This document shows, piece by piece, positions 44,268-63,812 of a stretch of DNA of 64,000 bases (positions within the stretch are counted from its first letter, which is position 1; each line of letters starts with the position of its first letter). Location: positions 186,001-250,000 of the IMG/VR virus record IMGVR_UViG_3300023179_004149. One strand, given 5' to 3'. The position numbers were made by a program, and so were the translations under genes. The notes under the pieces are model-generated. The model saw only the letters and a list, made by a program, of their open reading frames with translations. It was not told where the DNA came from and did no database searches.

Positions 44268-44274
44268 CTCCGTT

Positions 44275-45627: not shown

Positions 45628-45653
45628 AAATGAACCTATTTATAATAAAAAAT

Positions 45654-47458: not shown

Positions 47459-48241
47459 TTAAAATTCACAATCTCGGTCTAAGGTCTTAACAACAAATTC
47501 AGAGTTTTCTATATTATTAATTCTTACCTTTTTATACTTTAACCCGACTATCACACCTTTGGCGTCTAAATAGCGTAAATCTGAATAGTCACCATTGATT
47601 ACTGTAAACCCTTTAAACTTTTTAGGTATATGTTTTTCAAATACCACTGCCACATTCATATTATTGTTTAGTGCTATTTGGCATTCATGCCAGTTTTTAC
47701 CACTATATGAAAATGTCAGATGATAGTTTTTATACTTAGATAAAAGTTTATATCTGTTGACTACTTTCGTATAATCATAAAATTGTATGTTTGGGAGTAA
47801 CTGGAGTATATTAAAATCTTCTAATTTGAAACTCTCAGGCGATATATCTGAAGTTCCGTTAATACGAACCGAAAAATTATATCCTTTACTGTCAGCCATA
47901 TTCTTATATGCTATAATTTCCGCATATAGCCATTGCATAAAGAATTTTCTGTTATTAAAAAAAAGTTTGGTTTTTTCAATCCTTGCACGGTTGATAGTGT
48001 TTTCATGTATATCTATTCTGTTATGTCCGCTTTCATTCAGGCATAGACGTTTGCATTCAACCGTATGTTTGGGGCAAACATTGAATCCTGATAGGTCGGC
48101 GGGTGCTAAATACAATACATAGGTTAATGTATTCAATACCTTACTTTTGGCTATCTTTGAAGATAGTGATACGCCTCCCAAATATGATAATTTTGTATCA
48201 CGTTTGGCTTGCGCTCGGTTGGTGAATTTTAAGTCAGTCAT
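47459..48241 (-). CDS. GP88-like protein
   Basis: LYLAPA...NVCP...C...CL..SG, RINGTSDI, FYDYTK, HLTFSYS, GD.SDLRYLD..GVIVGLK. Family name recalled from memory. Confidence 0.75.
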   Translation of the reverse strand: MTDLKFTNRAQAKRDTKLSYLGGVSLSSKIAKSKVLNTLTYVLYLAPADLSGFNVCPKHTVECKRLCLNESGHNRIDIHENTINRARIEKTKLFFNNRKFFMQWLYAEIIAYKNMADSKGYNFSVRINGTSDISPESFKLEDFNILQLLPNIQFYDYTKVVNRYKLLSKYKNYHLTFSYSGKNWHECQIALNNNMNVAVVFEKHIPKKFKGFTVINGDYSDLRYLDAKGVIVGLKYKKVRINNIENSEFVVKTLDRDCEF

Positions 48242-48395
48242 AATAAAGTTGTTTGTTGTGACTGCAAAGGTACAACTTATTTTGGTATTACCAACAAATA
48301 GTTTGAATATTTTTATTTTTAAATTAAAAAAGGCGCCGTATATAATACAGCACCTTACTTGAGTAGATAGGGATATAGGTTAACAACAAACAAAG

Positions 48396-48581
48396 TTAAT
48401 AATTATGATTGAATACGCCATTATGTGGCATGGGGTTATGGTATGAGTACAATGTGCTTACATTAAAATCCCTGCACCATGTATTGAAGTCAGGTCTGTT
48501 TTCAGGTGTTACTGTGCTTTTGATTTGCACACCTTTTGCCACCTTTGGGGCTGTCTCTTTTTTAAGTTTGAAAAATAGCAT
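48396..48581 (-). CDS. Small hypothetical protein
   Basis: Starts MLFFKLKK downstream of a promoter cassette. Confidence 0.6.
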   Translation of the reverse strand: MLFFKLKKETAPKVAKGVQIKSTVTPENRPDFNTWCRDFNVSTLYSYHNPMPHNGVFNHNY

Positions 48582-48641
48582 GTTTGTTGAATTTAAAGTG
48601 CAAAGATAAGGCGGATATTTCAATCCGCCAAATCTTTTTTG

Positions 48642-48958
48642 TTAATGGAATGTTAAGGTGTTTAAACTATCCTTAGCCACATAATTGTTGGAACCACCAG
48701 TAAAATCTGAATAGTTTTTAGCGGTACGGTATAGTAATTTATCGTATGCAAAATGCCTTACATCTGAACAAGACATATAGTAGATTTGTCCGTTCGGAGC
48801 TGTAAAGAAACCACTGAAAATGTAGAAACCGTAATTGAATTGAATTTCGGTACAACCCAACTTAATTAATTCAGCTGTGATACGTTTGAACTCTTTACGT
48901 ACCCATGACTTAAATTCTGAAGATAAGTCTGAACCACTGTAATTTTTACGCTTCATAT
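48642..48958 (-). CDS. Hypothetical protein
   Basis: Starts MKRKNYSG downstream of a promoter cassette. Confidence 0.7.
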
Positions 48959-49029
48959 GTTTGTTGTTTAGACTGCAAAGGTAAGGTGGATTATTCAATC
49001 CACCAAACCCCCGCAATGTTAATTCAATG

Positions 49030-49602
49030 TTAACGTATTCCGTATACATTCAGGTACAAATTAACTTTTGACCCTTTATAATATTCTTTATATTCATTGA
49101 TTTTTTCAATCATTTGTTCTGTTGTGGTAAACGTCACATCGGGTTTAACTTCAAGTCCTAAATTAGTAATATCGGTATCATTCCACCTGTAAGGGTATAG
49201 GGTTACTGTTATACCCTTATCCCGTAATTGTTCGATTGTGAGTGCATTTTTAATGGCTTTCTTATAGAAAGAAAGGTACTTACCGAATGTGGTATTACGG
49301 GTTGAATTTGGGCTAATTGCTATACCTGAATACCAACCAAAACTTTTATCATTGTATTCACCATTATTGTTATTAACAAGACCATCTCTGTATTCTGTAA
49401 TGCTACTCAAAAGGTCAGTAATAGGGGTAATTAAACCATTTTTGGTGTGTGCGTATGTATTACCCCATTCCCTTACCCTCCTCGTACTTCTACCCCTTAT
49501 ATCTGTTTCGTATAGATTATTGCAACCTTGTTCCAATAATGGTAGTACCGCATTGTCGCCCACCTTAATGAATTGAGCTTTGTAAAGAATTGTGTAACTC
49601 AT
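49030..49602 (-). CDS. Hypothetical protein
   Basis: Promoter cassette at 49625. Confidence 0.7.
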   Translation of the reverse strand: MSYTILYKAQFIKVGDNAVLPLLEQGCNNLYETDIRGRSTRRVREWGNTYAHTKNGLITPITDLLSSITEYRDGLVNNNNGEYNDKSFGWYSGIAISPNSTRNTTFGKYLSFYKKAIKNALTIEQLRDKGITVTLYPYRWNDTDITNLGLEVKPDVTFTTTEQMIEKINEYKEYYKGSKVNLYLNVYGIR

Positions 49603-49729
49603 ATGTTTGTTGTTTTTGTTACTGCAAAGGTAGGGAGTATTACCGACAATTCCAACACCTCAACATATATTTTTTTCTGTGATCCCCTGGGGCTTCACCT
49701 GGTTGTGATCCTGACTGATAAACTAAAAG

Positions 49730-49782
49730 GGCTCTCGACTGGGATCGAACCAGTATGGTGTAGTTTTGATATTACCAACACC
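49730..49782 (-). pseudogene. tRNA remnant (T-arm plus preceding hairpin)
   Basis: ACTGG-TTCGATC-CCAGT T-arm and a GGTGT/ACACC hairpin. No D-arm or pairing acceptor 5' strand. Confidence 0.45.
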
Positions 49783-49808
49783 CCCAACACATATTTTTTT
49801 CCGTGTTT

Positions 49809-50021
49809 TTACGGTTTTATATGTGGTTTTAAATCGTGGGCCGTTAACTCGTTTAGGGTTAATATTTCTTCGTATTTACACACTTTAGGGTCTGGTTGGT
49901 GCATCACATCCAACCACGTACTAACACCATGTGTATCTCCGTTGATACCGACTGATATCTCAATCTTGTATTTTTCCAGTAGGGCGTGTAGTTCTTTAAT
50001 AAATTCATTGCGGTTATCCAT
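49809..50021 (-). CDS. Small hypothetical protein
   Basis: Promoter cassette at 50048. Confidence 0.65.
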   Translation of the reverse strand: MDNRNEFIKELHALLEKYKIEISVGINGDTHGVSTWLDVMHQPDPKVCKYEEILTLNELTAHDLKPHIKP

Positions 50022-50272
50022 GACTTGTCGTGTTGTCTAAACTATCACAAAGGTACAACTTTTTTGACTAATCCTATACCCAAAAAAAAATATATTTCTT
50101 TTTATAATAGTTGAAACCATCTGGCGGATCTGGGGACTATATTTGCCAGGCTGATAAACTAAAAGGGCCGATCTGTTAAGATCAACCCTTTAGCATATGG
50201 AACAACAAACAAGTATGATTAATAGAGGGGTAGAGCCGCAAATACTACCATTTACCCGCATCCTCTATTTAG

Positions 50273-50355
50273 TGGTCAGGACAGGAGTCGAACCTGTGAC
50301 CCAATACCGACCAGCGGACCTCTTAGTTGTGCTCTACCAACTGAGCTACCTGACC
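50273..50355 (-). tRNA. tRNA-like RNA with enlarged, non-canonical anticodon arm (no assignable anticodon)
   Basis: Acceptor GGTCAGG/CCTGACC, D-arm GCTC-AGTTGGTA-GAGC, T-arm ACAGG-TTCGACT-CCTGT, 28 nt in place of the 17-nt anticodon arm, own promoter at 50367-50397. Confidence 0.65.
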
Positions 50356-50458
50356 AAATTAAATAACAAAGATAGGGTTTATAGGTCAACCAACAAATGT
50401 TACCGCAAAGGTAAGGTGGATTATTGAATCCACCAAACCCTGCAATGTTAAGGTTGTG

Positions 50459-50812
50459 TTAATTGAATTGTTCCGCCCACTTGTTGCAAGTTGCTTTATC
50501 AATCCATCGGATAAGCGGAGTAATTTCCTCAACTGTGGTTTTACAGTCAACACTATCACCCTCCTTGTCAGTACCAATAATCAGGATATTACCCACAATA
50601 GGGTAGTTCCAATCGGGCATCATTACACCGCCCTCAAACGGGTGAAATAAACCCTCATCATCGGCATAGATGGTATCACCGTTATCAAACTCAAGAGGGC
50701 ATGTAAAACAGGTACATTCGTTACCAATAGCCTCGTAAATGGCTGATAAACCCTTACCCAACTCAATCTGGGTGATTGTCTTGTTTGCTGAATCAATCTT
50801 AATTGCTTTCAT
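50459..50812 (-). CDS. DUF3846-like protein
   Basis: LSAIYEAIG...IYADDEG...PIVGNILIIG.D.EG. Family name recalled from memory. Confidence 0.65.
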   Translation of the reverse strand: MKAIKIDSANKTITQIELGKGLSAIYEAIGNECTCFTCPLEFDNGDTIYADDEGLFHPFEGGVMMPDWNYPIVGNILIIGTDKEGDSVDCKTTVEEITPLIRWIDKATCNKWAEQFN

Positions 50813-50867
50813 ATCGTTTGTTAATTTTGTTACTGCAAAGGTAAGGTGTATTCAACACCCACCAAAT

Positions 50868-51338
50868 TTATTTTGTTAAGTTTGTGTTAATACTCCATTT
50901 GATAAGATAATCGGAGTTGAATGTGTTGCAACACATACCGCACGATTCGAACTGCATCAGGTTTGGTTTTTTATGCCTCCTGTGGGTATGACCATTGGGG
51001 CATACGCCAATATACCGTGGCTCTGGTTTTGTTACTTCACTTGAGTAACACCTATTACCGTCACAACCAATTTCGATAGCTTTAGCCCTCCAGACAGCAT
51101 TATGACCATGTTTGAAACCAACTAAGGCATGTGCTATCTCATGCAGTATGGTATTGCGCACTTGGCTTTCATCATTAAGTTTAACCAGATGGTGGGATAG
51201 GCTTATTTTTTTTAGGTCGTAGTTACAAGCACCAAACCTACGTTTAGCGTTATCGAATGAGAACCGCCAACCAGAGGCTATAAGGTTGTGTTGTTTCATT
51301 AGCTCGTTAGCCAATGTTTCCGCTTTGAATAAATCCAT
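50868..51338 (-). CDS. SprT-like zinc metalloprotease
   Basis: RRFGAC, NTILHEIAHAL, GH...W. Confidence 0.85.
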   Translation of the reverse strand: MDLFKAETLANELMKQHNLIASGWRFSFDNAKRRFGACNYDLKKISLSHHLVKLNDESQVRNTILHEIAHALVGFKHGHNAVWRAKAIEIGCDGNRCYSSEVTKPEPRYIGVCPNGHTHRRHKKPNLMQFESCGMCCNTFNSDYLIKWSINTNLTK

Positions 51339-51390
51339 ATGTTTGTTGTTTAGACAGCAAAGGTAAACTAACTTTCCGATACCACCAAAT

Positions 51391-51666
51391 TTATTTTTTA
51401 CGGTAGTCAGCAATAACATTTACCTTATAACCACGTTCGGCGGCGCGTTTAAGGAAGTCATCATAAAAACCTAGATTACACTGCCCTTGTTTACCGTTAT
51501 TAAGTTTGCGATTAATATTCGCTGGGTCATACCAAAAAGAATCCCAGTATTGTTTTGTTAATTTGGTTGAACCATCCATAACAGTCACATCCTCTCGGAT
51601 AATAACATTAAACACATTACGTTCAGTAGGATAATAAGTATCGGGAAATGGTGTTGTCTCACTCAT
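51391..51666 (-). CDS. Hypothetical protein
   Basis: Promoter cassette at 51674. Confidence 0.6.
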   Translation of the reverse strand: MSETTPFPDTYYPTERNVFNVIIREDVTVMDGSTKLTKQYWDSFWYDPANINRKLNNGKQGQCNLGFYDDFLKRAAERGYKVNVIADYRKK

Positions 51667-51728
51667 AATACCACAAAGGTAAGCTAATTTAATGGGGTTA
51701 CCAAATTAATTTGGTAACCCCCATAAAT

Positions 51729-52535
51729 CTATTCAATTTCGCTCACGACTTCAGAAGACGTTAACATTGCAAGTATGTCATCGCAAGATAGTTTATTTTC
51801 CAACAACGATTTGCAGAATTTGTATAATTCGTTTGTTGAATTATCGGGTATTAATTTCATGGCTTTACGTAATTCAACCATTGAATTAATATTACCGAAT
51901 TCTTCATCCATTGTTTTCTTTGTTACCTTTTTGCCAGTTTTTTTGGCGTTATCCAGAGCCGTTTCAACTTTTTCAAGTAGAACAGCTTCATCCAAAGATT
52001 TGTTGGATTTAATAACATCCATGACCAAAGTTGCACTTATTTCGTTTTCACGTATACGATTCTTCAACTTGGTTGGCACATCACTTAAGATGAGCATATT
52101 ATATATGTGTGTTTCAGTAACACCCAAATTAGTTGAAATTTCTTTCACTGTTAATCCGCAATTACGCAAACGGTTAATCAGCGTACTTTCCTCCAGTGGG
52201 GTGAGTCGTTTACCGTCATTGCACACAAACATATCAACCAACCTTCTTTCTTCTGAAGGGGCTTTTTCAGATACGAAAGGCACACGAATTTCAATACCTT
52301 GTTCAATTAAAAGCATACACGCCTTTAACCTGCGATGACCATCAGTTAGATAATATTCTCCGTTTTTTTTGTATCCACGAAGATTAACTCTAACCCCATT
52401 TTCTTTAATGGATTCAGCTAGGGCTGTAATATCACCATAATCTTCACGAACATTGAATCCATCAATAACATTAATGGCCCTCGGGTCAACGTGAAACATA
52501 TCGCTGCGTCGTTCAATTAATAATGTGTTTTCCAT
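51729..52535 (-). CDS. ParB/Srx-like N-terminal domain protein with HTH
   Basis: FNVR...LAESIKENG...LTDGHRRLKA, then a KEIS.NLG HTH-like segment. Confidence 0.85.
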   Translation of the reverse strand: MENTLLIERRSDMFHVDPRAINVIDGFNVREDYGDITALAESIKENGVRVNLRGYKKNGEYYLTDGHRRLKACMLLIEQGIEIRVPFVSEKAPSEERRLVDMFVCNDGKRLTPLEESTLINRLRNCGLTVKEISTNLGVTETHIYNMLILSDVPTKLKNRIRENEISATLVMDVIKSNKSLDEAVLLEKVETALDNAKKTGKKVTKKTMDEEFGNINSMVELRKAMKLIPDNSTNELYKFCKSLLENKLSCDDILAMLTSSEVVSEIE

Positions 52536-52677
52536 ATATTTTTCTTTGCACAAAGGTAACTAACTTTCTGATACCGCCAACTTTTTTATTGTTAAGTCAT
52601 TGTTAACTTTCCTGGTGTGGATCCATGCGGAATAAAAAGGTCGGGGTTTCTACCCCGACCCTTGGATTCATATATGG

Positions 52678-52878
52678 CTATTCTTTTAGTGCATCAATAA
52701 ACGCCTTCTTACATTTATAGTGTATGTAAATAGCCCTTGCCGAAAAGAAGCGACAAGATACGGGCGTATCTTTGCTCCTTATCTTTTCACCGCAATGTTC
52801 ACATGAATGTCCACGATTTACGGTTACTATGTCGGCGCCGATAAAGTCCTTTTTTTTATATATCTTTTTCATTGTCAT
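52678..52878 (-). CDS. Small zinc-finger-like protein
   Basis: CEHCGE...HYKC, overlapping the upstream stop. Confidence 0.55.
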   Translation of the reverse strand: MTMKKIYKKKDFIGADIVTVNRGHSCEHCGEKIRSKDTPVSCRFFSARAIYIHYKCKKAFIDALKE

Positions 52879-53191
52879 CCGTATATTCATCCTCAGGGTC
52901 AAACGATTCAGTTTCGGGTTCAGGTTCTGTTACCGCTTCCAGTTCTTTTATCTCTTTGGCTGATAACTTAACTTCTTGTGGCACATCGTCCAAAACATCC
53001 TCATCCAGTTCATCTAAAATGAAAGATGTCTTAACGGGTTCAACCTTAATGGGTTCAACCTCTACGGGTTCTACAATCTTGTTGGTTGGTGGTCGGTGTG
53101 TTACCGAATACCTTACCATTGGTTTGGGTTGCCATTTTTTGTTGCCGTGGTCAAGCTCTTTGCTGAATTCGTATGGCTTTGTAGCTTCCAT
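52856..53191 (-). CDS. Acidic hypothetical protein
   Basis: Promoter cassette at 53218. Confidence 0.65.
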   Translation of the reverse strand: MEATKPYEFSKELDHGNKKWQPKPMVRYSVTHRPPTNKIVEPVEVEPIKVEPVKTSFILDELDEDVLDDVPQEVKLSAKEIKELEAVTEPEPETESFDPEDEYTDDNEKDI

Positions 53192-53311
53192 TGTTTTTCA
53201 ATTTTGTTTTGTTAGTGCAAAGGTAAGGTGTATTCAACACCCCACCAAATTTATTTTTGTTAAAGGAAATAAAAAATGCCAGGTGGTGAGCCTGGCATTT
53301 AGTTTAGATGG

Positions 53312-53926
53312 TTACTTTTGCGCCATCCTTATTACTTCATCGGGAATGTCGATACCCAGTTCTTTCAGGTTGGTATTCAGTATGCGGTCACCCTTATTCA
53401 TCTTTGGTAAGATGTTGGTGATGATTGATTGTTTAACCGCTCGTGCGCCGAAGTGATGAACACAATCAACTAAGTTCTTATTGGCCTTAATGAACTTGTG
53501 TAGTGTGTATTTGTATTTGGTTTCATCACCAACACATATACCTTTAACCATATCCTTTTTTAGTTTAGCTGCGAATTGTTTAGCCGCTTTTGCCAATAGG
53601 ATTTCCTCTATCAGCAGGTATATTATCTGCTCGACCTGTGTGTGTAGTTTAATATGGGTTGGCTCCTTCATAAAACCCCAACCGTTATCGAACAGGAATT
53701 GGTTCATATTAAGTTCAATACACATCTTCTCAATGTGGTCTTTAGCTTCCGAGTTCAGCTGTATATCAATTTCTCCGCCGTAACCGTCGTCATTGTAGTA
53801 ACCCACCTTTTTCTTTCTGAGGTAAACGTCGGCGAACAGCCCCATAAGGTCATGCCCGAAACCATCCTTTACGTTCTTTACAGATAGCTGTTCCTTGACA
53901 GCATTCAACATGGTTTGTTTATCCAT
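53312..53926 (-). CDS. Hypothetical protein
   Basis: Start MDKQTML downstream of the cassette at 53945. Confidence 0.7.
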   Translation of the reverse strand: MDKQTMLNAVKEQLSVKNVKDGFGHDLMGLFADVYLRKKKVGYYNDDGYGGEIDIQLNSEAKDHIEKMCIELNMNQFLFDNGWGFMKEPTHIKLHTQVEQIIYLLIEEILLAKAAKQFAAKLKKDMVKGICVGDETKYKYTLHKFIKANKNLVDCVHHFGARAVKQSIITNILPKMNKGDRILNTNLKELGIDIPDEVIRMAQK

Positions 53927-54037
53927 TGCTTTCGATTTAGAATACAAAGGTATGTAAAAAAGTTAAACCACCAAATTTATTTTAGGTGATCGTGTATTCA
54001 AACAAAACAGGGTGGTAACCACCCTGTTTTGAATACT

Positions 54038-54406
54038 TTATGCGTAGTTTTTCATTTTATCTGCACCGTAAGCAATAACCACATCATCCCAACAACATGT
54101 ACCTTTATATGGGTTATTTTCAGAATCAACCCATTCAGCCCAATCTTCAACGTATGCAAACATATCCACATACTCCACAGCCCATTGATGGAGTATATCC
54201 AGACAAGCTATGTAGCCAATATTCTCTTTCTCATACAGCTCTTTCATGTAGTTGTCGGAGAGAATGATTGCAACCAGAGCCACCTCTTTAGCATAATCAT
54301 TTATCTTGTCCTTCACCAGATTAGTTAGCTCGGCATCTGGTGCAATGTTGCCCATGTTAACCACTTTGGCGACTATCTGGTCTGGTAATGTAATTGCGAA
54401 TGACAT
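54038..54406 (-). CDS. Hypothetical protein
   Basis: Start MSFAITL downstream of the cassette at 54428. Confidence 0.7.
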   Translation of the reverse strand: MSFAITLPDQIVAKVVNMGNIAPDAELTNLVKDKINDYAKEVALVAIILSDNYMKELYEKENIGYIACLDILHQWAVEYVDMFAYVEDWAEWVDSENNPYKGTCCWDDVVIAYGADKMKNYA

Positions 54407-54465
54407 TGTGTTGTTGTTTTGTTTCAGCAAAGGTAAATTAACTTTCTGATACCACCAAATTTATT

Positions 54466-54672
54466 TTATTCGGTTTCAACGGGAATAATACGGCAATGAT
54501 CCGCCAATTCATCCAGAGGTATACGTCCGCTGTTTGAGGAATAATAACCCTGTCGTTCATATCGTTTAGCCCATTCTTTCTGGGCCGCCTCAGCCTCTTG
54601 TGGTGTGTCCCAAACCTCGTCAAATGATATGGAGAAACCATCTGGGCTTAATACGTCATACTTAGTAGCCAT
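54466..54672 (-). CDS. Small hypothetical protein
   Basis: Cassette at 54693. Confidence 0.7.
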   Translation of the reverse strand: MATKYDVLSPDGFSISFDEVWDTPQEAEAAQKEWAKRYERQGYYSSNSGRIPLDELADHCRIIPVETE

Positions 54673-54802
54673 GCTGTTTTCGATTTAGAATGCAAAGGTA
54701 AAATAACTTTATTACACCACCAAATTAAATTTGGTTTATCTGGTGATCTCCCTGGCAACCAGAATACAAAAAGAAATGGTGGGCTATTAACCCACCATTC
54801 AC

Positions 54803-55501: not shown

Positions 55502-55530
55502 TTAAATTGTTTTTGGTATGTTAACGGATA

Positions 55531-56606: not shown

Positions 56607-56660
56607 GTTGTTGTGTTTTGTTTATGCAAAGGTAATTAACTTTCTGATACCACCAAAATA

Positions 56661-56924
56661 TTAATCACATATCTGGGTGATAGACCTTTGGAATGGATTA
56701 TATTCAACTTGTCGTCCCATTACCCAATCACCCCTGTCAACTTTCAGGGCTTTGTGTTCGTTGCTGAACGAGCCATCTGGCTGCTCATGTCTTAGTACGC
56801 TATCGTCTTTCACCACAACCTTGCCAAACTGTGGGTTGGCTGTGTCGGTTGCAAACGAGCCGTACAATGTGTGCTGATTAGCACCTTCCCCCTTCAAAAG
56901 GGTGTGTTTTGTCATGTGTTGCAT
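56661..56924 (-). CDS. Small His-containing beta-type hypothetical protein
   Basis: KGEG.NQH, LRHEQ...EHKAL.V..G.W...QVEY.P. Confidence 0.65.
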   Translation of the reverse strand: MQHMTKHTLLKGEGANQHTLYGSFATDTANPQFGKVVVKDDSVLRHEQPDGSFSNEHKALKVDRGDWVMGRQVEYNPFQRSITQICD

Positions 56925-56978
56925 ATTGTATATTGTTTTGTTCTGCAAAGGTAATAAAAGAAAATTAAACCACCAAAT

Positions 56979-57203
56979 TTAATTTATCTGGCTTATCTGG
57001 CGACCATACGCCCAATGTCCGTTATCAAGGTCAACAGTAATATTACCATTCTTTACCGTTGCCCAATCAACCGAATCAACAGGTTTACCATACTTCTCAC
57101 CAGACTTACACACCTCAATACCTTCCACTTTAGCAGTCTTGGCTGGTTCGCTACCGAAACCACCACGCCATAATACTGCGTCTCCTACTTTAAGTTTTGC
57201 CAT
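56979..57203 (-). CDS. Small hypothetical protein
   Basis: Cassette at 57223. Confidence 0.7.
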   Translation of the reverse strand: MAKLKVGDAVLWRGGFGSEPAKTAKVEGIEVCKSGEKYGKPVDSVDWATVKNGNITVDLDNGHWAYGRQISQIN

Positions 57204-57345
57204 TTGTTTATGATTTAGATTGCAAAGGTAAACTAACTTTCTGATACCACCAAATTTATTTTATTCTGGGGATCTACCAGGTGCCTTAAAATGAGATAGG
57301 GTTAACCGTTAAAGTTAACCCATACCCCACCAAAACACAACTTCT

Positions 57346-57780
57346 TTATGTTGTGACCTCTTCCGTTTTATACTTTTTAATAAAGTCGGCGGGGTCCCCA
57401 TCGAACAATACTTTTTTCGGCACATCGATACACTTCATGGTGAGTTTCTTGGTATCATCGTCATATATAACGTGGTAATGGTAATCCTCCCACATATCCT
57501 TATCACCTCCACGGTATACATAGATACCACCCGCACCATCTTTGAAGTCTTTAATGAACTGGGCTATGAGACAATTAAACCCGTTAAACACCCTCTGGTC
57601 TCCCAAACCCACACCATTCACCATTTTACCGCTTAGAAGGAATTCAGCAAGCTCGAGGCCATGACCTTTGGGGTAGCCGTCATAGTGACGGTATACTGTT
57701 ACTATCTTTTCGGTTTTTTTCTTTTGTTTCTCATTATCCGTCCATGTCTGGATAAACGTTGTGAGTGCTCTTGTACCCAT
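57346..57780 (-). CDS. Phage hypothetical protein (MGTR...YRHYDGYP)
   Basis: Cassette at 57800. Confidence 0.75.
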   Translation of the reverse strand: MGTRALTTFIQTWTDNEKQKKKTEKIVTVYRHYDGYPKGHGLELAEFLLSGKMVNGVGLGDQRVFNGFNCLIAQFIKDFKDGAGGIYVYRGGDKDMWEDYHYHVIYDDDTKKLTMKCIDVPKKVLFDGDPADFIKKYKTEEVTT

Positions 57781-57809
57781 GTGTTTTTGATTTAGATAGC
57801 AAAGATAAA

Positions 57810-58076
57810 TTAACTTTCCGATACCACCAAATTTAATTTGGTGGGTTTATACAAGGTTCTTTTCGGTGCGTAAGTGGTATTTACATACGTAGCTCCCCGT
57901 ATACCATGAGTGTTTAGGTAATGCTCCATGTATCTCTTATCATCTTTTCGAATTCTCATAGCTGAAGTCATCCTGGTGGTGTATTCAACGCCATAATTTG
58001 TTAACCTAAGGATCTTTTCACCTCTCTTTGAGGATAGCCCCTCAACCCATACAACATAGTATTCAACCCTCCCCAT
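57810..58076 (-). CDS. Hypothetical protein
   Basis: Coupled to the upstream stop, runs into the next promoter. Confidence 0.55.
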   Translation of the reverse strand: MGRVEYYVVWVEGLSSKRGEKILRLTNYGVEYTTRMTSAMRIRKDDKRYMEHYLNTHGIRGATYVNTTYAPKRTLYKPTKLNLVVSES

Positions 58077-58077
58077 A

Positions 58078-58371
58078 TTACCAAATGTTTTTTAAGTTTG
58101 TTTTAGTCTTTATCCACTCCATAATCTGGTCGGCATAGTAACTGGTGGTTAAGTCACCCAGAAACATAAACAACCCACGGGGTGCATCGCTATTATTCGT
58201 ATTGAATGTAGCTCTGGTGAATTCCTTCGCCTTACTCTGGTCACTGCTTTTACGTGTACCTGTAGACATATCCCACTCCTTACCGATAACAGTAATATTA
58301 TCACCTTTGGTGTCAACAGTGATAACCCCACCCTTACATAGCTCTCCGAGCTTCCAAGTTTTAGTTGCCAT
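58078..58371 (-). CDS. Hypothetical protein
   Basis: Start MATKTW downstream of the -7 box at 58391. Confidence 0.7.
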   Translation of the reverse strand: MATKTWKLGELCKGGVITVDTKGDNITVIGKEWDMSTGTRKSSDQSKAKEFTRATFNTNNSDAPRGLFMFLGDLTTSYYADQIMEWIKTKTNLKNIW

Positions 58372-58480
58372 ATCGCTTTTGATTATGGTGCAAATGTATA
58401 ACAACTTTGCCAGAAAAAAAAATTAATTTTATTTTGTTGATTCGAATAAGATTCGTAACTTTACTTAAAATTCAAAGGTT

Positions 58481-58714
58481 ATGGCAAAAAACACAAGCAT
58501 TACACCAAGCCAAGTTAAGGCGATAAAAACGGTGGTTAGACAGTACATCTCTGATGAACGCAGGGGTTGTTCAGAGTGTCTACTGGATGAGGGTATTGTC
58601 GATGAAGACGATGAAGACATCGATTCTATGACAGATGAAGAATTCTATGAAAAGTATCATGCTGATTATGACCACATCTGGTTTTATTTGTATGAGTTAT
58701 CACAAATAGAATAA
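58481..58714 (+). CDS. Small acidic hypothetical protein
   Basis: First gene of the rightward arm. Confidence 0.65.
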   Translation: MAKNTSITPSQVKAIKTVVRQYISDERRGCSECLLDEGIVDEDDEDIDSMTDEEFYEKYHADYDHIWFYLYELSQIE

Positions 58715-58876
58715 ATTTGGTGGTTAGAAATAACCACCTTATTTTTGTGTCCTTAAGTGATAAACAACATGGCTAAAATATTCTCAGCTCCGTCCAGGAT
58801 TAAAAGGATCTCACTAAAAATAAATTTGGTGGTTAACTTTTTTATTCCTACATTTGCATTCTAATTAGGTAAAATA

Positions 58877-59098
58877 ATGAACACAGCTTTAACGAACTAC
58901 ATTATTAATTCAATACACGAAGGTTACACTGTTGCACAATCTAAATTATTGCGTAACACATATAACTTAACAAGGCATGGTCAAAAAATGATTGTGTTTC
59001 AAGGATGGCAATCCGACAATACGGGGTGGTACGCCTGCTTAGTTGATAATCACGGGGCTTCTGGTGCGCGAACCAGCGAACCAATAAAAATTGCATAA
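58877..59098 (+). CDS. Small hypothetical protein
   Basis: Cassette at 58825-58856. Confidence 0.6.
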   Translation: MNTALTNYIINSIHEGYTVAQSKLLRNTYNLTRHGQKMIVFQGWQSDNTGWYACLVDNHGASGARTSEPIKIA

Positions 59099-59120
59099 GA
59101 CACCATCAAAAACAAAAAAC

Positions 59121-59315
59121 ATGAAACCAGCAGAACAAACTTACAACGCAATTGATGAGCAAGTAAAGGCGTTAACAAACGAAATTTGCGAGAAACTTTT
59201 ACCAAACGGCACAACCTTTATGCAGCGGCTATTTGTTGCTAATACTTTGAAAAGGATGGCTCAGACCACAAAAATGGAAATGGTCAAACATATGACCACC
59301 AAATTCAACGTTTAG
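59121..59315 (+). CDS. Small hypothetical protein
   Basis: A-rich 5'UTR then MKPAEQ. Confidence 0.6.
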   Translation: MKPAEQTYNAIDEQVKALTNEICEKLLPNGTTFMQRLFVANTLKRMAQTTKMEMVKHMTTKFNV

Positions 59316-59392
59316 GCTAAGGTAGCCTAACAAAGTAAAAATAAATTTGGCGGTTAACTTTTTTATGCTTACCTTTGCAAAAACACAACAGT

Positions 59393-59644
59393 ATGCAACT
59401 CTTAAACGTAATCAGTATTCATAACGGTATCGTGCACGCCATTCACTCCTTCGCGGTACACAACCATGATGAACATCCGAATTTACCAGTGGAAGAGGCG
59501 GAGAAAACATTCGAGGAAGAAATCAGGTCTTATGCTTCTGATGTAACCGATGAGGATATTGAAGATGCAATCGAAAACGGCTCATGGGATGATAATAACG
59601 GACATGAGGTATTATTAACGTGGTCAACAACCGTAAACGAATAA
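59393..59644 (+). CDS. Small acidic hypothetical protein
   Basis: Start MQLLNV downstream of the cassette at 59346-59377. Confidence 0.65.
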   Translation: MQLLNVISIHNGIVHAIHSFAVHNHDEHPNLPVEEAEKTFEEEIRSYASDVTDEDIEDAIENGSWDDNNGHEVLLTWSTTVNE

Positions 59645-59645
59645 T

Positions 59646-59954
59646 ATGGCAATGACAGGACACTTTCTGGACTTCTTCTTAGAAGTGGCCAGAGTAAGAG
59701 GCAACATGATTGCCGAAATCTATTCAATGACCAACGGCGGTTCTGACATTACCTGTAACGACGGCGATTTTGCCATCAGCAGAAAGGATGATGAATATAC
59801 CATTGCTACGGTGTTCCATTCACCTATCGACGATAAAACGTATGTGAAAGCAGATGACGGTACGGTGTTTGAAATCAGTGAGCTTTCAACCGATGACCTT
59901 GTAGCTCTTTATGAATTCGTGTTCGGGTATCTGCACCCCGATCAAAGCGAATAA
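59646..59954 (+). CDS. Hypothetical protein
   Basis: Coupled ORF. Confidence 0.65.
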   Translation: MAMTGHFLDFFLEVARVRGNMIAEIYSMTNGGSDITCNDGDFAISRKDDEYTIATVFHSPIDDKTYVKADDGTVFEISELSTDDLVALYEFVFGYLHPDQSE

Positions 59955-59978
59955 TTACATCTTTAACAACAACACATA

Positions 59979-60164
59979 ATGGGCACACTGGAAAAAATAA
60001 AAGCGCATGGGCAAGAACTCTGCCTGCGACTGAAAGCGGGGGAAAAGCTAACAGCTGATGAACTTGCTACCGCTAATATGTACCTATCGCTTTATGGGGG
60101 TAAAGCGGGGAATGCTGGCAAACGCATCACCACTGAAACAAAGCAAAGAAACAAGGCGAGGTAA
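59979..60164 (+). CDS. Small hypothetical protein
   Basis: A-rich UTR, co-directional run. Confidence 0.55.
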   Translation: MGTLEKIKAHGQELCLRLKAGEKLTADELATANMYLSLYGGKAGNAGKRITTETKQRNKAR

Positions 60165-60177
60165 CGAATAACAACAT

Positions 60178-60348
60178 ATGAAACCAACAATCTATAGTGT
60201 GGTAACTCTCCGTAGGCTCATCCAGAAGAATCAATCCAAGGAATTGGGGGTGTTTTACGGTAAATATGATTTACGTGGTAAAGCCTTTCGTGAATTGAAT
60301 AGATTTATGCTAGAACAACATTTACAACTTTTAAAATCCGCAATATGA
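60178..60348 (+). CDS. Small hypothetical protein (56 aa, not in ORF track)
   Basis: MKPTIYSVVTLRRLIQKNQSKELG..., with an ATGA overlap with the next gene. Confidence 0.55.
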   Translation: MKPTIYSVVTLRRLIQKNQSKELGVFYGKYDLRGKAFRELNRFMLEQHLQLLKSAI

Positions 60349-60533
60349 ACCACACAGTAGCAATGGCAATAGTAAAATCAGTTTATCCAAAAGCAACTTA
60401 TGTGAAATTTGTAAATTCTGAATATTTACATCATATTCGATTATACACGAATTCTTATCCATATATCAGAAGTCTCGGCGTAAGCGACATTTCTGAAGAG
60501 AATGCATGGATTGACGCCGCAAAAAAGATTTAA
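60345..60533 (+). CDS. Small hypothetical protein
   Basis: Coupled ORF. Confidence 0.55.
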   Translation: MNHTVAMAIVKSVYPKATYVKFVNSEYLHHIRLYTNSYPYIRSLGVSDISEENAWIDAAKKI

Positions 60534-60690
60534 ACAACCAAATAAATACCATAGCGGCGACTTATACCCACAACACACCAAACTTGTAATGGATCGGCTT
60601 TGGGTTATTTTTGAAATATGGTTTGGTTATGTCAATAAAAAGATTTAATTTTACAACGCAATATTGCAAATACAATTAAATTTTATCACA

Positions 60691-61320
60691 TTGCACAAAG
60701 GAGTAATACTCATCGTTAAGGCTGATGATGCCAACGAAGCACAAGAGAAGGTGGAAGAATTCCTCGAGATGTACAACGGAGTGGTTTGGGACTGGTACGT
60801 AATCGGTGGAAGGTGGTCTGGCATACTGAACAAACTGAATCAACGGTTTTTGACCGCTGCGAATCGGTTCATGGCTAAAAAATGCAAGGTTAAGACCAAA
60901 GAACTCAGGGTAACCGATAAACTATTGAAAGAATGTGCCAATGACCTTAATGCTATCTGGGAAAAGATGGGTGGCACAGGTAGTAACCCTTATGAACGTA
61001 AGTGCGGCACTGACATTATGCCACTATCTGAGTGTACCGATATTGTAAAGAAGTGGAAGCGTGACCTTGTAAAAGAAGCTAACAAAGCGTTTCGCCAGCT
61101 CTGCATAGAGCGTAAAAAAGAACGTGAAGCCCGTATGCGCGGAGATAAACACTGCGGTTTTTTATCTGCGTACCATGCAGGTTTGTACAAGGATGCGGTG
61201 TTTGATAGTTTCTGCTTCGAGAGCAATACTTATGACATTGATGTTTCCACAAATGACCCAACCAAAGCACTGGATAACCCAGAAGGTCGCTGGGCGGTGA
61301 TTGTCGACCTACACAATTAA
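60691..61320 (+). CDS. Phage hypothetical protein (WDWYVIGGRWSG motif)
   Basis: Probable TTG start giving MHKGVILIVKA. Confidence 0.7.
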   Translation: MHKGVILIVKADDANEAQEKVEEFLEMYNGVVWDWYVIGGRWSGILNKLNQRFLTAANRFMAKKCKVKTKELRVTDKLLKECANDLNAIWEKMGGTGSNPYERKCGTDIMPLSECTDIVKKWKRDLVKEANKAFRQLCIERKKEREARMRGDKHCGFLSAYHAGLYKDAVFDSFCFESNTYDIDVSTNDPTKALDNPEGRWAVIVDLHN

Positions 61321-61335
61321 TATCTACACTTCTAT

Positions 61336-61366
61336 AACTGGTGTGGGTGTCTCGCTCACACCAGTT
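61336..61366 (+). terminator. Intrinsic terminator
   Basis: aactggtgtg...cacaccagtt plus T-run. Confidence 0.8.
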
Positions 61367-61404
61367 TTTTTATCTCTTTATTTTCATTAACAAACAAATC
61401 CACA

Positions 61405-61512
61405 ATGGCCAAATCAAGTTCGAAAGTAAAAATCACCAAAACATCTTACTCTTTCACCAGGAAACCAAAGCTTAAACAGGGTGGTATACCGAAACCCAGC
61501 AAAAAAAGATGA
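61405..61512 (+). CDS. Small basic peptide (35 aa, not in ORF track)
   Basis: MAKSSSKVKITKTSYSFTRKPKLKQGGIPKPSKKR after an A/C-rich UTR. Confidence 0.4.
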   Translation: MAKSSSKVKITKTSYSFTRKPKLKQGGIPKPSKKR

Positions 61513-61591
61513 CCAGACTCTTGGTTCTGTGGTATACAAAAACAATTTGGTGGTTTCAAAATAATTTCCTACTTTTGTAAAAAATTTAAAT

Positions 61592-62200
61592 ATGCTTACG
61601 TTTGAAGTTGTTTCAGGTGAGATTGTTATTAGTGACCCGTGTTATAGCATTGAACCGCCTACCTGGTGTGCTGGTACGGTAAAAGCAAAGAACGGCACTT
61701 GGGGTGTCTATTATCAAACGGATGACAGGGGTGACCACATTACAGAAATCTGGGCTTATAGCCTCGATGCTGCGGTGAACCGCCCACACATCCCAGATGA
61801 ACTCACTCAAGCACCACCTCTACCGTTCATTAATGGCGTTGATTCTGGACAGCTCGGTTACTTTGACCGTAGTCACTATCGAAACGATGATTCCGCCAAA
61901 GAACTGGCTAAATACGACTTTGGTGAGGGATATAATTCTCAACCTGGTGATGAGTGGTATCGTGCTATGTGTGAAATCACTTTAAGTAATGAAAGTTTCG
62001 GCGTTACCCCTCACGGTGTAGTTAGCTCGTCAGGTTTTGGTGATGGCTCATACAAAACGCAAGGTATCTTCAACGAAGATGGTGAATGTATCGGTTTACG
62101 TACCGTGTTTATTGAGCAAGATTACGCCGATGATGAGGAAGATTGGTGGGCTCATGAAGAAATACCAGAAGAAGATGAAGACGACGATGACGATAATTAG
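61592..62200 (+). CDS. DUF4241-like acidic protein
   Basis: SGEIVISDPCY, GVDSGQ, SSGFGDGSY. Family name recalled from memory. Confidence 0.7.
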   Translation: MLTFEVVSGEIVISDPCYSIEPPTWCAGTVKAKNGTWGVYYQTDDRGDHITEIWAYSLDAAVNRPHIPDELTQAPPLPFINGVDSGQLGYFDRSHYRNDDSAKELAKYDFGEGYNSQPGDEWYRAMCEITLSNESFGVTPHGVVSSSGFGDGSYKTQGIFNEDGECIGLRTVFIEQDYADDEEDWWAHEEIPEEDEDDDDDN

Positions 62201-62488
62201 CAACCCTACTTTTGCAAAATAACCCCCAAGATAGAAACCTTGGGGGTTATTATTTTTTTTACCAGGATCCAAAATAATTTTGGTAATCCAAAAATTGATT
62301 GTATATTTGTGATGTTATTACTGAAAAAGGTAACGGGCGCACTATGAAACGTGTGAGGAGTTCTAAGTGATCTTATCTTGTTATATTACAAAAAGAAATA
62401 TACAAAATAATATTTGGTGGTGTTGAAAACTCGTTATACATTTGCACAAGAAAACTTAATTATCTCACACTAAAATAAAAACATCGTT

Positions 62489-62977
62489 ATGGTACGTACA
62501 AGATTAACACCAGAGCAGAGAGTACAGGTAGTAACCCTTGCCAATCAGGGTGTGAAACAAGTTGACATAGCCAGAAAATACGGCGTAAGCGAGGCATTGA
62601 TATCATATCATATTACTAAGGCTAAACAAGCCAGAGCCTCTATGACACCAGCCCAGAAAGCATGGGAAACAAGGCGCAAAAACGCCGAACCACATGCCCA
62701 GCCACAGGCGGAAGTAGCCGATGAGGTATCGACACTCTCTCCGCAACAGAAAGCGTGGATAACAAGGCGCAGAGCTGCCATGACACCTGCACAGAAAGCA
62801 TGGGAAACCAGGAAAGCCCAGAACGCCGAAAAGGTAAACAAGCGCACTCGCAAGGTTGCCATACTCGAATCGTTCACCTTCAATGGTACGGTAAAGGTAG
62901 ATAAGGAACTCCTGAAATACCTGCATCGCCATCCAAGTGGTAAGGAAGTAATCTTTGCCAAAACAAAGGTAGGCTAA
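62489..62977 (+). CDS. HTH DNA-binding protein with three KAW(E/I)TRR repeats
   Basis: LTPEQR..V..L..QG....DIARKYGVS...IS HTH, then TPAQKAWETRR, SPQQKAWITRR, TPAQKAWETRK. Confidence 0.75.
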   Translation: MVRTRLTPEQRVQVVTLANQGVKQVDIARKYGVSEALISYHITKAKQARASMTPAQKAWETRRKNAEPHAQPQAEVADEVSTLSPQQKAWITRRRAAMTPAQKAWETRKAQNAEKVNKRTRKVAILESFTFNGTVKVDKELLKYLHRHPSGKEVIFAKTKVG

Positions 62978-63061
62978 ACAAATGGGGAGATTAATTTCTC
63001 CCCACTAAAATTTGGAAAATTAAGTTTCTTATACTAAATTTGCATCCTAAATCAAAACACA

Positions 63062-63808
63062 ATGTTTCATTTCTCATTAGCATCATCAGACAGCAAAGCA
63101 AAAGCAAGGGAGTATTGTGCATCATTCTACAACGGCGAACCTGTATTGTCGGTATCATCTAATACCTTCGGCGAAGTACCTGTATTCTTCGGCGCAGCCA
63201 ATAAAGGTCAGCGTTTCGATTGTGTTGAAATTGACCGTACCACATTCTTATCTGGTCTAAGACCATATAACGAATTGAAGAAGCAATACCCTACTCTTAC
63301 TTACCAGAACAAAGATGTGTTCGATATGGATTTCTCCCAATACAAACGCATCAATCTGGATTTCTGCGGCAACCTGAACAATGCCTTAATGTTCAACCTG
63401 TTCAAACACCTGAAAGACTTTAATGGTAAGGTTTTCATAACTTTGCTGCGTGGTCGGGAACAGTTTGATGTTAGCCACTATGGTGCTAAAAGCAATGCAC
63501 ATTTCAGGGATGTTATCTTTCCCCAGATGATTAAGACCTTTACTGGTCTGGATGTGTACCTGCCTCGCCATGACTATGAGAACTATAAAGAAGGTAGCTC
63601 CAAAGCCTCTCACATGATGATATATTCTTTTATCAGGAATGAAAAAGATGTAAAGGCGAGGGAACACAATAAGAGAAACAGCGATAATATAGATGCTATA
63701 TACAACTATATCGACACACATGAAACATATTGTGTCATGGATGTTGTGAAAGCAACTGGCATCGATAAGGAAACGGTTGAACATTACTTTAAAAAATACC
63801 AACTTTAA
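63062..63808 (+). CDS. Hypothetical protein, possible SAM-dependent methyltransferase fold
   Basis: FDCVEID, NKDVF, INLDFCG resemble class I MTase motifs II-IV, but no clear motif I. Confidence 0.45.
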   Translation: MFHFSLASSDSKAKAREYCASFYNGEPVLSVSSNTFGEVPVFFGAANKGQRFDCVEIDRTTFLSGLRPYNELKKQYPTLTYQNKDVFDMDFSQYKRINLDFCGNLNNALMFNLFKHLKDFNGKVFITLLRGREQFDVSHYGAKSNAHFRDVIFPQMIKTFTGLDVYLPRHDYENYKEGSSKASHMMIYSFIRNEKDVKAREHNKRNSDNIDAIYNYIDTHETYCVMDVVKATGIDKETVEHYFKKYQL

Positions 63809-63812
63809 TTTT

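What the first reader, a model, noticed from the sequence alone, without database searches (positions are those of the whole stretch)
48241..63064. Array of ~27 gene cassettes each carrying its own host-type promoter and 5'UTR
Seen: nearly every small gene is preceded by a ~60-bp unit, for example aaatttggtggtatc(a/g)gaaagtta(g/a)tttacctttgc...ctaaa...aaacat-ATG. There are at least three near-identical subfamilies (51358/52551/54428/56627/57223/57800; 48976/50406; 50836/53218). Many genes are also followed by a terminator hairpin, and the array diverges from ~58.4 kb. Established: TTTG(-33)/TAnnTTTG(-7) is the Bacteroidota primary-sigma consensus, and T4-type phages use repeated promoter-stem-loop (PeSL) units to shuffle accessory genes. 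Inference: a plug-and-play early host-takeover or anti-defence gene bank, recombining at the promoter repeats.
Basis: partly seen in the sequence, partly recalled or inferred. Interest (0 to 1): 0.7.

Follow-up and report, generated by a model that had tools for sequence, protein, structure and literature searches.

The report
Promoter-flanked accessory gene array in phage
A 321-kb freshwater phage carries an ~18-kb block of about 35 small, mostly unknown genes, most with their own copy of a repeated Bacteroidota-type promoter, and related phages have gained, lost and swapped these genes at those repeats, much as T4-like phages do with their PeSL elements.

Summary
The window holds 27 promoter-like units (TTTG(GTGG), about 19 nt, TAnnTTTG(C), A-rich leader, ATG). 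Twenty lie on the minus strand (48265-58398) and seven on the plus strand (58716-63042). Three more lie past the window end. The pattern occurs 33 times in the window against 4.0 +/- 2.0 in shuffles. Terminator-like hairpins are enriched (38 vs 13 +/- 3.3). E. coli-type promoters are not (62 vs 57). The three near-identical subfamilies are real.

The window is part of a complete 320,934-bp phage genome from a lake metagenome. The phage has sigma-like genes but no detected RNA polymerase. A second upstream motif, (A/C)TATTTAT, marks genes outside the array.

Related contigs from other samples keep the backbone order, but about half of their array genes have no homologue in this genome. Thirty of 56 homology-block ends fall within 10 nt of a unit (13% expected). 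Two single-cassette differences leave hybrid units with the crossover in the -7 box.

This is a Bacteroidota-promoter counterpart of T4-type PeSL hyperplastic regions. Recombination at the units is supported. Early timing and anti-defence or host-takeover function are untested, and about 80% of the genes are ORFans.

The parts
48241..58430 (-). Minus-strand arm of the array: 20 units, 22 ORFs, one tRNA-like gene
58431..64000 (+). Plus-strand arm: 7 consensus units plus one degenerate promoter, about 14 ORFs; continues to about w67.6k outside the window
48265..48294 (-). Unit driving the GP88-like gene 47459-48241
   Evidence: Pfam GP88 5.9e-35; relatives join this -7 box to w53242
48601..48632 (-). 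Hairpin-type unit, then 61-aa ORF 48396-48581
   Evidence: spacer stem-loop -19.1 kcal/mol, z -6.7
48976..49007 (-). Hairpin-type unit (subfamily 2), then 104-aa ORF 48642-48956
   Evidence: -19.7 kcal/mol; this cassette is missing in relatives, joint 48639>49017
49625..49655 (-). Unit, then 190-aa ORF 49030-49602
   Evidence: ORF kept in L093 and L094 at 72-73% aa
50048..50055 (-). -7 box only (poor -33), then 70-aa ORF 49809-50021
   Evidence: zero depth for this ORF in runs X10, X11, X14
50367..50397 (-). Unit 11 nt upstream of the tRNA-like gene
50273..50355 (-). tRNA-like gene with about 11 extra nt in the anticodon arm
   Evidence: Rfam tRNA 52.5 bits; ARAGORN finds none
50406..50437 (-). 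Hairpin-type unit (subfamily 2), in tandem with the tRNA promoter
   Evidence: -17.7 kcal/mol
50836..50866 (-). Subfamily-3 unit, then DUF3846 gene 50459-50812
51358..51389 (-). Subfamily-1 unit, then SprT-like gene 50868-51338
   Evidence: upstream edge is a breakpoint in relatives
51674..51705 (-). Unit whose -33 lies in a hairpin (51694-51722), then 91-aa ORF 51391-51666
52551..52581 (-). Subfamily-1 unit, then ParB-like gene 51729-52535
   Evidence: PHROG 1033 3.4e-38; the ParB-like gene and the 91-aa ORF are absent in L093-L098
53218..53249 (-). Subfamily-3 unit, then ORFs 52856-53191 and 52678-52872
   Evidence: spacer hairpin -15.3 plus upstream terminator 53274-53300
53945..53975 (-). 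Unit, then 204-aa ORF 53312-53926
   Evidence: terminator 54003-54031 just upstream
54428..54459 (-). Subfamily-1 unit, then 122-aa ORF 54038-54406
   Evidence: in run X8 the gene is kept but follows another promoter, break at 54424
54693..54724 (-). Unit, then 68-aa ORF 54466-54672
   Evidence: terminator 54774-54800 upstream
56627..56657 (-). Subfamily-1 unit, then 3-gene operon 54803-56606 (DUF6915, acidic 228-aa, 232-aa)
   Evidence: Pfam DUF6915 5.1e-31; X8 breaks at 56606 and 56614
56946..56977 (-). Unit, then 87-aa ORF 56661-56924
   Evidence: its leader forms the 3' half of the L093 hybrid unit
57223..57254 (-). Subfamily-1 unit, then 74-aa ORF 56979-57203
   Evidence: its upstream half forms the 5' half of the L093 hybrid; the 74-aa cassette is absent there
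57800..57831 (-). Subfamily-1 unit, then 144-aa ORF 57346-57780 and hairpin 57299-57321
58391..58398 (-). -7 box (TACATTTG, no clear -33), then ORFs 58078-58371 and 57810-58076
58433..58463 (+). Degenerate promoter (TTTG-N19-TAACTTTA), then 77-aa ORF 58481-58714
   Evidence: read from the sequence
58716..58747 (+). Hairpin-type unit followed only by a 31-codon ORF
   Evidence: -13.5 kcal/mol
58825..58856 (+). Unit, then ORFs 58877-59098 and 59121-59315
   Evidence: (family D6)
59346..59377 (+). Unit, then 5-gene operon 59393-60533
   Evidence: 91% identical to the 58825 unit
60691..61320 (+). ORF (TTG start at 60691 or ATG at 60871) with no unit of its own; terminator 61336-61366
61546..61577 (+). 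Unit, then 202-aa acidic ORF 61592-62200 and terminator 62218-62251
   Evidence: weak DUF4241 hit, E 0.008
62279..62309 (+). Unit with no convincing ORF downstream (8 codons)
62413..62444 (+). Unit, then HTH protein 62489-62977
   Evidence: HTH_Tnp_1 3.5e-06
63011..63042 (+). Unit, then 248-aa ORF 63062-63808 and a next ORF that runs off the window

Best explanation
The region is the hyperplastic accessory-gene region of a 321-kb lytic phage of a freshwater Bacteroidota host.

Each cassette, a gene or short operon, is headed by a strong host-type promoter: an extended -33 TTTGGTGG, a spacer of about 19 nt and a -7 TAHHTTTGC. A leader of about 11-23 nt follows; it is A-rich and has no Shine-Dalgarno sequence. 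About half of the units also carry a stem-loop, either between -33 and -7 or just upstream. That stem-loop would insulate the cassette from read-through.

Host RNA polymerase with the host primary sigma would read these promoters as soon as the DNA enters the cell. The other genes use a different motif, probably read with phage sigma factors.

The units are 45-63 nt long and 82-98% alike. They therefore serve as portable homology. Recombination between units deletes, inserts or replaces whole cassettes without breaking expression, so related phages share a backbone but carry different cargo.

Shown: the motifs, their enrichment and position, the terminators, the turnover of cassettes, the breakpoints and hybrid units.

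Inferred: promoter activity, early timing, terminator activity, homologous recombination as the cause, and any counter-defence or host-takeover role of the cargo.
For: Motif enrichment and position:
- The unit pattern occurs 33 times against 4.0 +/- 2.0 in shuffles.
- Genome-wide there are 151 matches against 61 in the reversed control. Of these, 69 are intergenic and at most 120 nt upstream of a same-strand start, and 26 of the 69 fall in 6% of the genome.
- All 29 units fit TAHHTTTG, the consensus from F. johnsoniae TSS mapping.
- Sigma-70-type hexamers are not enriched. Terminator-like hairpins are.
- Six units have a strong stem-loop in the spacer, and about nine have a strong upstream hairpin.

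Transcription context:
- The phage has sigma-70 region 2-like ORFs and no detected RNA polymerase.
- A second motif, (A/C)TATTTAT, lies within 60 nt (mostly 5-20 nt) before 64 starts and is almost absent from the array.

Cassette turnover:
- In relatives fetched through SprT homologues, 18 of 34, 10 of 19 and 12 of 28 genes have no homologue in this genome. Shared genes range from 58 to 99% aa identity.
- 30 of 56 block ends lie within 10 nt of a unit, against 13% expected (P 8e-13).
- Novel cassettes in relatives carry the same unit families.
- Two hybrid units have their crossover in the -7 box.
- Logan contigs of other lakes show the same joints, with 222-255 nt of flank, and show promoter/gene uncoupling at 54424, 56606 and 56614.

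Alternative mechanisms: no tyrosine integrase was found.
Against: - There is no transcript evidence, so neither activity nor timing is shown.
- Almost every intergenic gap in the minus arm contains a unit. Clustering of block ends at units is therefore partly what any whole-cassette exchange would give. Only the hybrid units and the junctions inside leaders argue for crossovers inside the unit.
- Orthologous units are no better conserved than the coding sequence (84% vs 83%).
- Unrelated phage contigs (L010, L025) have similar spacers. Much of the unit likeness may therefore be convergence on a host optimum rather than shared descent.
- Only about half of the units have a stem-loop.
- No clear recombinase was found, only a sub-threshold RecA-like hit.
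- Cargo function is unknown.
Confidence: 0.7

Rival explanations
1. The units are only strong consensus host promoters, alike because selection pushes each towards the same optimum. Cassette turnover comes from illegitimate recombination or other events. Selection then keeps only products with intact promoter-gene units, so breakpoints merely appear to sit at promoters.
For: Unrelated phage contigs L010 and L025 have dense arrays with similar -33, spacer and -7 patterns. Orthologous units are not more conserved than genes. Nearly all intergenic gaps contain a unit, so block ends must fall near one.
Against: Paralogous units reach 97.8% identity over 45 nt, including spacer positions with no known role. 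Two single-cassette differences leave one hybrid unit with the crossover inside the shared -7 box, which is the signature of repeat-to-repeat recombination. Junctions at 56606 and 56614 lie inside the leader.
Confidence: 0.2
2. The conserved spacers, especially the perfect palindromes of the hairpin type, are operators for a phage- or host-encoded regulator. That regulator would switch the whole array on or off together, and the likeness among units would reflect regulator binding rather than recombination.
For: Subfamily-2 spacers are perfect inverted repeats lying between -33 and -7, where a bound dimer would block the polymerase. Subfamily-1 spacers recur in L093 and L099 on unrelated genes. 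An HTH protein is encoded in the array.
Against: At least five different spacer families coexist. No regulator has been linked to them. This reading does not explain the hybrid units or the cassette turnover, although it is compatible with them.
Confidence: 0.25
3. The array is an integron-like or transposon-like system in which a dedicated site-specific recombinase moves cassettes at the repeats.
For: The layout is an array of short cassettes separated by repeats with hairpins. One protein has a transposase-type HTH.
Against: No tyrosine integrase is present in the genome. The HTH protein lacks a catalytic domain hit. Each cassette has its own promoter, unlike integron cassettes. The repeats are promoters in sequence and position.
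Confidence: 0.03

Closest known systems
PeSL (promoter-early stem-loop) elements of T4-type phages (RB49/phi1, T4/PST, KVP40/nt-1)
   Same: Both are repeated units with a host primary-sigma consensus promoter, an AT-rich upstream stretch and often a stem-loop between or overlapping the two boxes. Both are concentrated in hyperplastic regions directly upstream of ORFans. In both, indels and replacements between close relatives are bounded by the units (PMC2839356, PMC4122927).
   Different: The promoter is the Bacteroidota -33/-7 type, with no Shine-Dalgarno sequence. Only about half of the units have a stem-loop. The phage shows no detected kinship to T4. Promoter and terminator activity and mini-circles, which were shown for PeSLs, are untested here.
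Host-takeover module of Bacillus phage SPO1
   Same: Both are clusters of about two dozen small early genes, read by host polymerase from several strong promoters, in a phage that later uses its own sigma factors (abstract of PMC6873191; details from general knowledge).
   Different: SPO1 promoters are not near-identical repeats linked to cassette exchange. Several SPO1 products have known targets, whereas none is known here.
Integron gene-cassette arrays
   Same: Both are arrays of short exchangeable cassettes separated by structured repeats.
   Different: Integron cassettes lack promoters and need an integrase and attC sites. Here every cassette has a promoter and no integrase is present.
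Free-standing homing endonucleases (seg/mob type) in T4 variable regions
   Same: An EndoVII/HNH-like gene on the opposite strand sits in the array just past the window. It lies at other positions in a relative and is flanked by a duplicated unit plus gene start.
   Different: Endonuclease activity and homing are not shown. The family hit is modest (E 6e-06).

Membership tests
PeSL-type regulatory cassettes | Repeated motif matching the host primary-sigma promoter consensus | tested here: met
   Matches the Bacteroidota consensus, not sigma-70: 33 vs 4.0 expected. All 29 units fit TAHHTTTG. TTGACA/TATAAT is not enriched.
PeSL-type regulatory cassettes | Stem-loop within or next to the promoter | tested here: inconclusive
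   Six of 29 units have strong spacer hairpins (-11 to -20 kcal/mol), one has a hairpin over the -33, and about nine have strong upstream hairpins. The rest have none.
PeSL-type regulatory cassettes | Concentration in hyperplastic regions, directly upstream of ORFans | tested here: met
   26 of 69 gene-proximal matches lie in 6% of the genome. About 80% of the genes have no family hit. Half of the relatives' array genes are absent from this genome.
PeSL-type regulatory cassettes | Indels and replacements between relatives bounded by the units | tested here: met
   30 of 56 block ends within 10 nt of a unit. Hybrid units. Joints in independent runs.
PeSL-type regulatory cassettes | Demonstrated promoter and terminator activity; mini-circles | not testable with these tools
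   Needs reporter assays, 5'-end mapping and outward PCR or long reads.
Bacteroidota primary-sigma promoter | -33 TTTG and -7 TAnnTTTG about 19 nt apart, start about 5 nt after the box | tested here: met
   The sequence and spacing are met. The start site itself is not testable here (one search gives the reference positions).
Integron cassette array | Tyrosine integrase plus promoterless cassettes with attC | tested here: not met
   No PF00589 match in the genome although the controls rang. The cassettes carry their own promoters.
Anti-defence or host-takeover gene island | Members with known or shown counter-defence or host-shutoff activity | tested here: inconclusive
   Pfam, PHROGs, NCBIfam and the Atlas give no such family. 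No dedicated anti-defence library was available.

The most novel reading that the evidence does not exclude
Promoter-mediated cassette exchange may be a convergent, general device of large lytic phages, here rebuilt on the Bacteroidota promoter. In this lineage it may be actively driven, for example by the mobile EndoVII/HNH-like module that makes breaks repaired through unit homology, or by circular intermediates. The array would then work as a population-wide shared bank of early genes, in effect a phage counterpart of an integron without an integrase.
Probability: 0.2. Interest if true: 0.75.

Novelty: new variant of a known kind. Interest (0 to 1): 0.5.

Why it matters
The principle was described for T4-like phages of Proteobacteria. 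Here the same architecture appears in an unrelated jumbo phage, built on a quite different promoter grammar, with natural variants from several lakes. Similar dense arrays occur in other putative Bacteroidota phage contigs.

Practical uses:
- The units are a ready set of compact, probably very strong promoter-leader modules for Bacteroidota genetics.
- The units flag early accessory genes in metagenomic phages of this phylum.
- About 60 distinct small ORFans across four genomes form a focused list to screen for counter-defence or host-shutoff activity in a phylum where few such genes are known.

Tried and rejected
- Megablast of the array against cultured phages found nothing.
- An exact subfamily-1 unit search in IMG/VR found nothing.
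- A JGI metagenome scan with the ParB-like protein found only the source contig.
- GP88-like relatives in IMG/VR and in cultured phages are distant (at most 49% identity) and span many host phyla, so they give no host call. They did reveal other dense promoter arrays.
- An exact-protein lookup with the DUF6915 protein returned only identical copies of this genome.
- ARAGORN finds no tRNA in the window or in the relatives. The tRNA-like gene folds no better than shuffles.
- NCBIfam and the ESM Atlas gave no function for the larger ORFans.
- A literature search for the DUFs in anti-defence contexts, and for such arrays in Bacteroidota phages, found nothing relevant in the held library.
- The integron reading is rejected because there is no integrase.
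- Own-polymerase transcription of the array is rejected because no Rpb2 match was found and the units fit the host consensus. The T7-type search was uninformative, since its controls did not ring.
- Several short-flank joints (side under 30 nt) were ignored as unreliable.
- RNA-level tests were not possible.

Full report
WHAT IS THERE

The window is bases 186001-250000 of a 320,934-bp virus record that CheckV rates as complete. It is the JGI contig Ga0214923_10000005. An independent ENA assembly of 320,734 bp and a Logan contig are 100% identical across the region, so the array is not an assembly artefact. Near-identical DNA occurs in lake, freshwater and pond metagenomes from several studies.

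From 48.2 kb to the window end, genes run leftward up to the start at 58371 and rightward from 58481. I call about 35 ORFs with a median length of 102 aa.

THE UNITS

Direct-repeat search finds families of 39-63 nt. Anchoring on TAnnTTTG shows a common plan:
- an AT-rich stretch;
- TTTGG(T/C)GG;
- a spacer that puts TTTG 17-21 nt before the box;
- TA(C/T)(C/A/T)TTTG, usually followed by C;
- an A-rich leader without a Shine-Dalgarno sequence;
- ATG about 15-27 nt after the box.

The pattern TTTG-N17-21-TANNTTTG occurs 33 times in the window against 4.03 +/- 2.01 in shuffles, and 26 of these lie in 48.6-63.0 kb. I count 27 units in the window and three more at w64269, w65322 and w66230.

The consensus matches the Bacteroidota -33/-7 promoter. 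TSS mapping in F. johnsoniae refined the box to TAHHTTTG, with its G at -5 (PMC6847099). None of the 29 units has G at the two middle positions. E. coli-type hexamers are not enriched (62 vs 57.3 +/- 6.9), whereas terminator-like hairpins are (38 vs 13.0 +/- 3.3).

Six units, plus w65322, share the spacer TATC(A/G)GAAAGTTA(A/G)TT. Two share a perfect palindrome, and 48601 is related to them. Two share a third spacer.

Six units fold into strong stem-loops between -33 and -7 (-11 to -20 kcal/mol, z -2.8 to -6.7). One has a hairpin over its -33. About nine have a strong hairpin just upstream.

One unit drives a tRNA-like gene rather than an ORF.

GENOME CONTEXT

Genome-wide, a looser pattern gives 151 matches against 61 in the reversed control. 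Of these, 69 are intergenic and lie close upstream of a same-strand start. Twenty-six of the 69 fall in 234-252 kb, and the rest are scattered at roughly 12-fold lower density.

The phage has two clear sigma-70 region 2-like ORFs and one weak one. No Rpb2-type polymerase was found. The T7-type search was uninformative.

Upstream regions that lack the host-type motif are enriched 12-18 fold for (A/C)TATTTAT(A). This motif sits within 60 nt (mostly 5-20 nt) before 64 starts across the rest of the genome and is almost absent from the array. This two-class layout fits a programme in which host polymerase with host sigma reads the array and phage sigmas redirect it later. The timing is inferred, not shown.

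CARGO

Family hits are few:
- GP88-like, DUF3846, SprT-like and ParB-like;
- DUF6915;
- an HTH protein and a weak DUF4241 hit.

PHROGs add only the name ParB-like. NCBIfam and the Atlas add nothing. Several products are very acidic (pI 4.1-4.5). None of this assigns a counter-defence or takeover role.

VARIATION AMONG RELATIVES

Laying Logan contigs from other samples on the array gave loose ends almost only at units. Five of these were other copies of the unit in this genome. Seven had flanks absent from the genome:
- In run X8, the 122-aa gene and the DUF6915 gene are kept but follow different promoters, with breaks at 54424 and at the ATG 56606.
- In run X8, the 56627 unit is kept but drives a different ORF, with the break at 56614.

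Runs X10, X11 and X14 hold an 85-95% identical relative:
- It lacks exactly one cassette. The joint 48639>49017 has 222 nt of flank and 7 shared bases.
- It lacks the 91-aa and ParB-like cassettes. The joint 51399>52652 has 61 other letters between and up to 255 nt of flank.
- It joins the -7 box before the GP88-like gene to the -33 region of the 53218 unit.

I then fetched assembled relatives through SprT-like homologues at 87% and 82% identity. These are L093 (from a 27.9-kb contig), L094, L095-L098 and L099/L100. They confirm the joints and show a collinear backbone with many cassette differences. L099 also has the SprT cassette in a different place.

Of their genes, 18 of 34, 10 of 19 and 12 of 28 have no homologue anywhere in this genome. 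Shared genes range from 58 to 99% aa identity, while the flanking GP88-like and 223-aa genes are 92-93% identical.

Of 56 homology-block ends inside the array, 19 lie within a unit and 30 within 10 nt of one, against 13% expected (binomial P 8e-13). The novel cassettes in relatives carry the same unit families.

Two single-cassette differences leave one hybrid unit each:
- In L093, the upstream half of the 57223 unit is fused to the leader of the 56946 unit.
- In L093, the upstream half of the 48976 unit is fused to the leader of the 48601 unit.

In both, the switch lies in the shared -7 box. This is the expected product of recombination between two direct repeats, in either direction.

CAVEATS

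- Almost every gap in the minus arm holds a unit, so block ends would fall near units under any whole-cassette exchange. The hybrid units and the junctions inside leaders carry the argument for crossovers within the unit.
- Orthologous units are no better conserved than coding sequence (84% vs 83%), and the two are uncoupled.
- Unrelated phage contigs have similar arrays: L010 has 36 matches in 20.7 kb, and L025 has 25 in 20.6 kb, each against 5 in reversed controls. Their spacers are partly similar. Part of the likeness is therefore probably convergence on a host optimum. It also shows that the layout is common in putative Bacteroidota phages.
- No recombinase was identified beyond a sub-threshold RecA-like hit, and there is no integrase.

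COMPARISON WITH KNOWN SYSTEMS

PeSLs of T4-type phages are defined as repeated sigma-70 early promoters with an AT-rich upstream region and a stem-loop, often between the boxes. They are concentrated in hyperplastic regions upstream of ORFans, and recombination between them causes indels and replacements (PMC2839356, PMC4122927).

Four of these features were tested here. Three were met and one, the stem-loop, was met only in part. The experimental features could not be tested.

The system works like a PeSL region. It differs in promoter grammar, in host phylum and in phage lineage. I found no description of such arrays for Bacteroidota phages in the held library. I file it as a new variant of a known kind.

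VERDICT

The promoter identity, by sequence, and recombination at the units are well supported. Early timing and counter-defence or takeover function are plausible but untested.

Noticed in passing
window 29860-46187, both strands: At least ten proteins begin with the same N-terminal motif, M(K/N)LNEQ(I/V)xR(M/I)KxMMG(L/I)xE, followed by unrelated sequence. It may be a shared targeting or packaging tag on a paralogue-rich block.
   Followed up: no
window 50273-50355 (-) and 49730-49754 (-): A promoter-driven tRNA-like gene scores 52.5 bits in Rfam but has about 11 extra nt in the anticodon arm, and ARAGORN misses it. A separate tRNA 3' fragment lies 0.5 kb away. In runs X10, X11 and X14 this stretch is rearranged: a contig joins w50331 to w49754 through 23 other letters, which as I read them would rebuild a normal-length tRNA with a CAU anticodon.
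   Followed up: partly
whole genome G000; e.g. window 14154, 20255, 26040, 29594, 32597: A second upstream motif, (A/C)TATTTAT(A), lies within 60 nt (mostly 5-20 nt) before 64 gene starts outside the array. It is enriched 12-18 fold in upstream regions that lack host-type promoters. It is a candidate middle or late promoter for the phage sigma-like factors.
   Followed up: partly
G000 250371-251221 (= w64371-65221, just past the window; L091:1386-2236): An opposite-strand two-gene module encodes an EndoVII/HNH-like protein (PHROG 1035, E 6e-06; the L094 homologue scores 1e-10). It uses the (A/C)TATTTAT motif rather than a host-type unit. It is flanked by a duplicated unit plus the first ~25 codons of the DUF932 gene, and is absent at this site in L099. 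L094 carries two homologues of the endonuclease gene at other positions in the array. It is probably a mobile homing-endonuclease insertion.
   Followed up: partly
window 62632-62674 and 62770-62812: An internal 43-nt direct repeat (86% identical, 138 nt apart) inside the HTH gene gives a repeated peptide motif.
   Followed up: no
window about 58000-60000: Cumulative GC skew reaches its minimum at the divergence point of the two arms. This could reflect only the strand switch of the genes, or a replication origin.
   Followed up: no
window 58716-58864 and 62279-62370: Two full units are followed by no convincing gene (a 31-codon ORF that runs into the next unit, and an 8-codon ORF). They could be small RNAs, micro-proteins or promoter relics left by cassette loss.
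   Followed up: no
L010 (IMGVR_UViG_3300032007_000053) and L025/L068: Unrelated putative Bacteroidota phage contigs have equally dense host-type promoter arrays with their own near-identical unit families. In L010 the array includes a tRNA cluster.
   Followed up: partly
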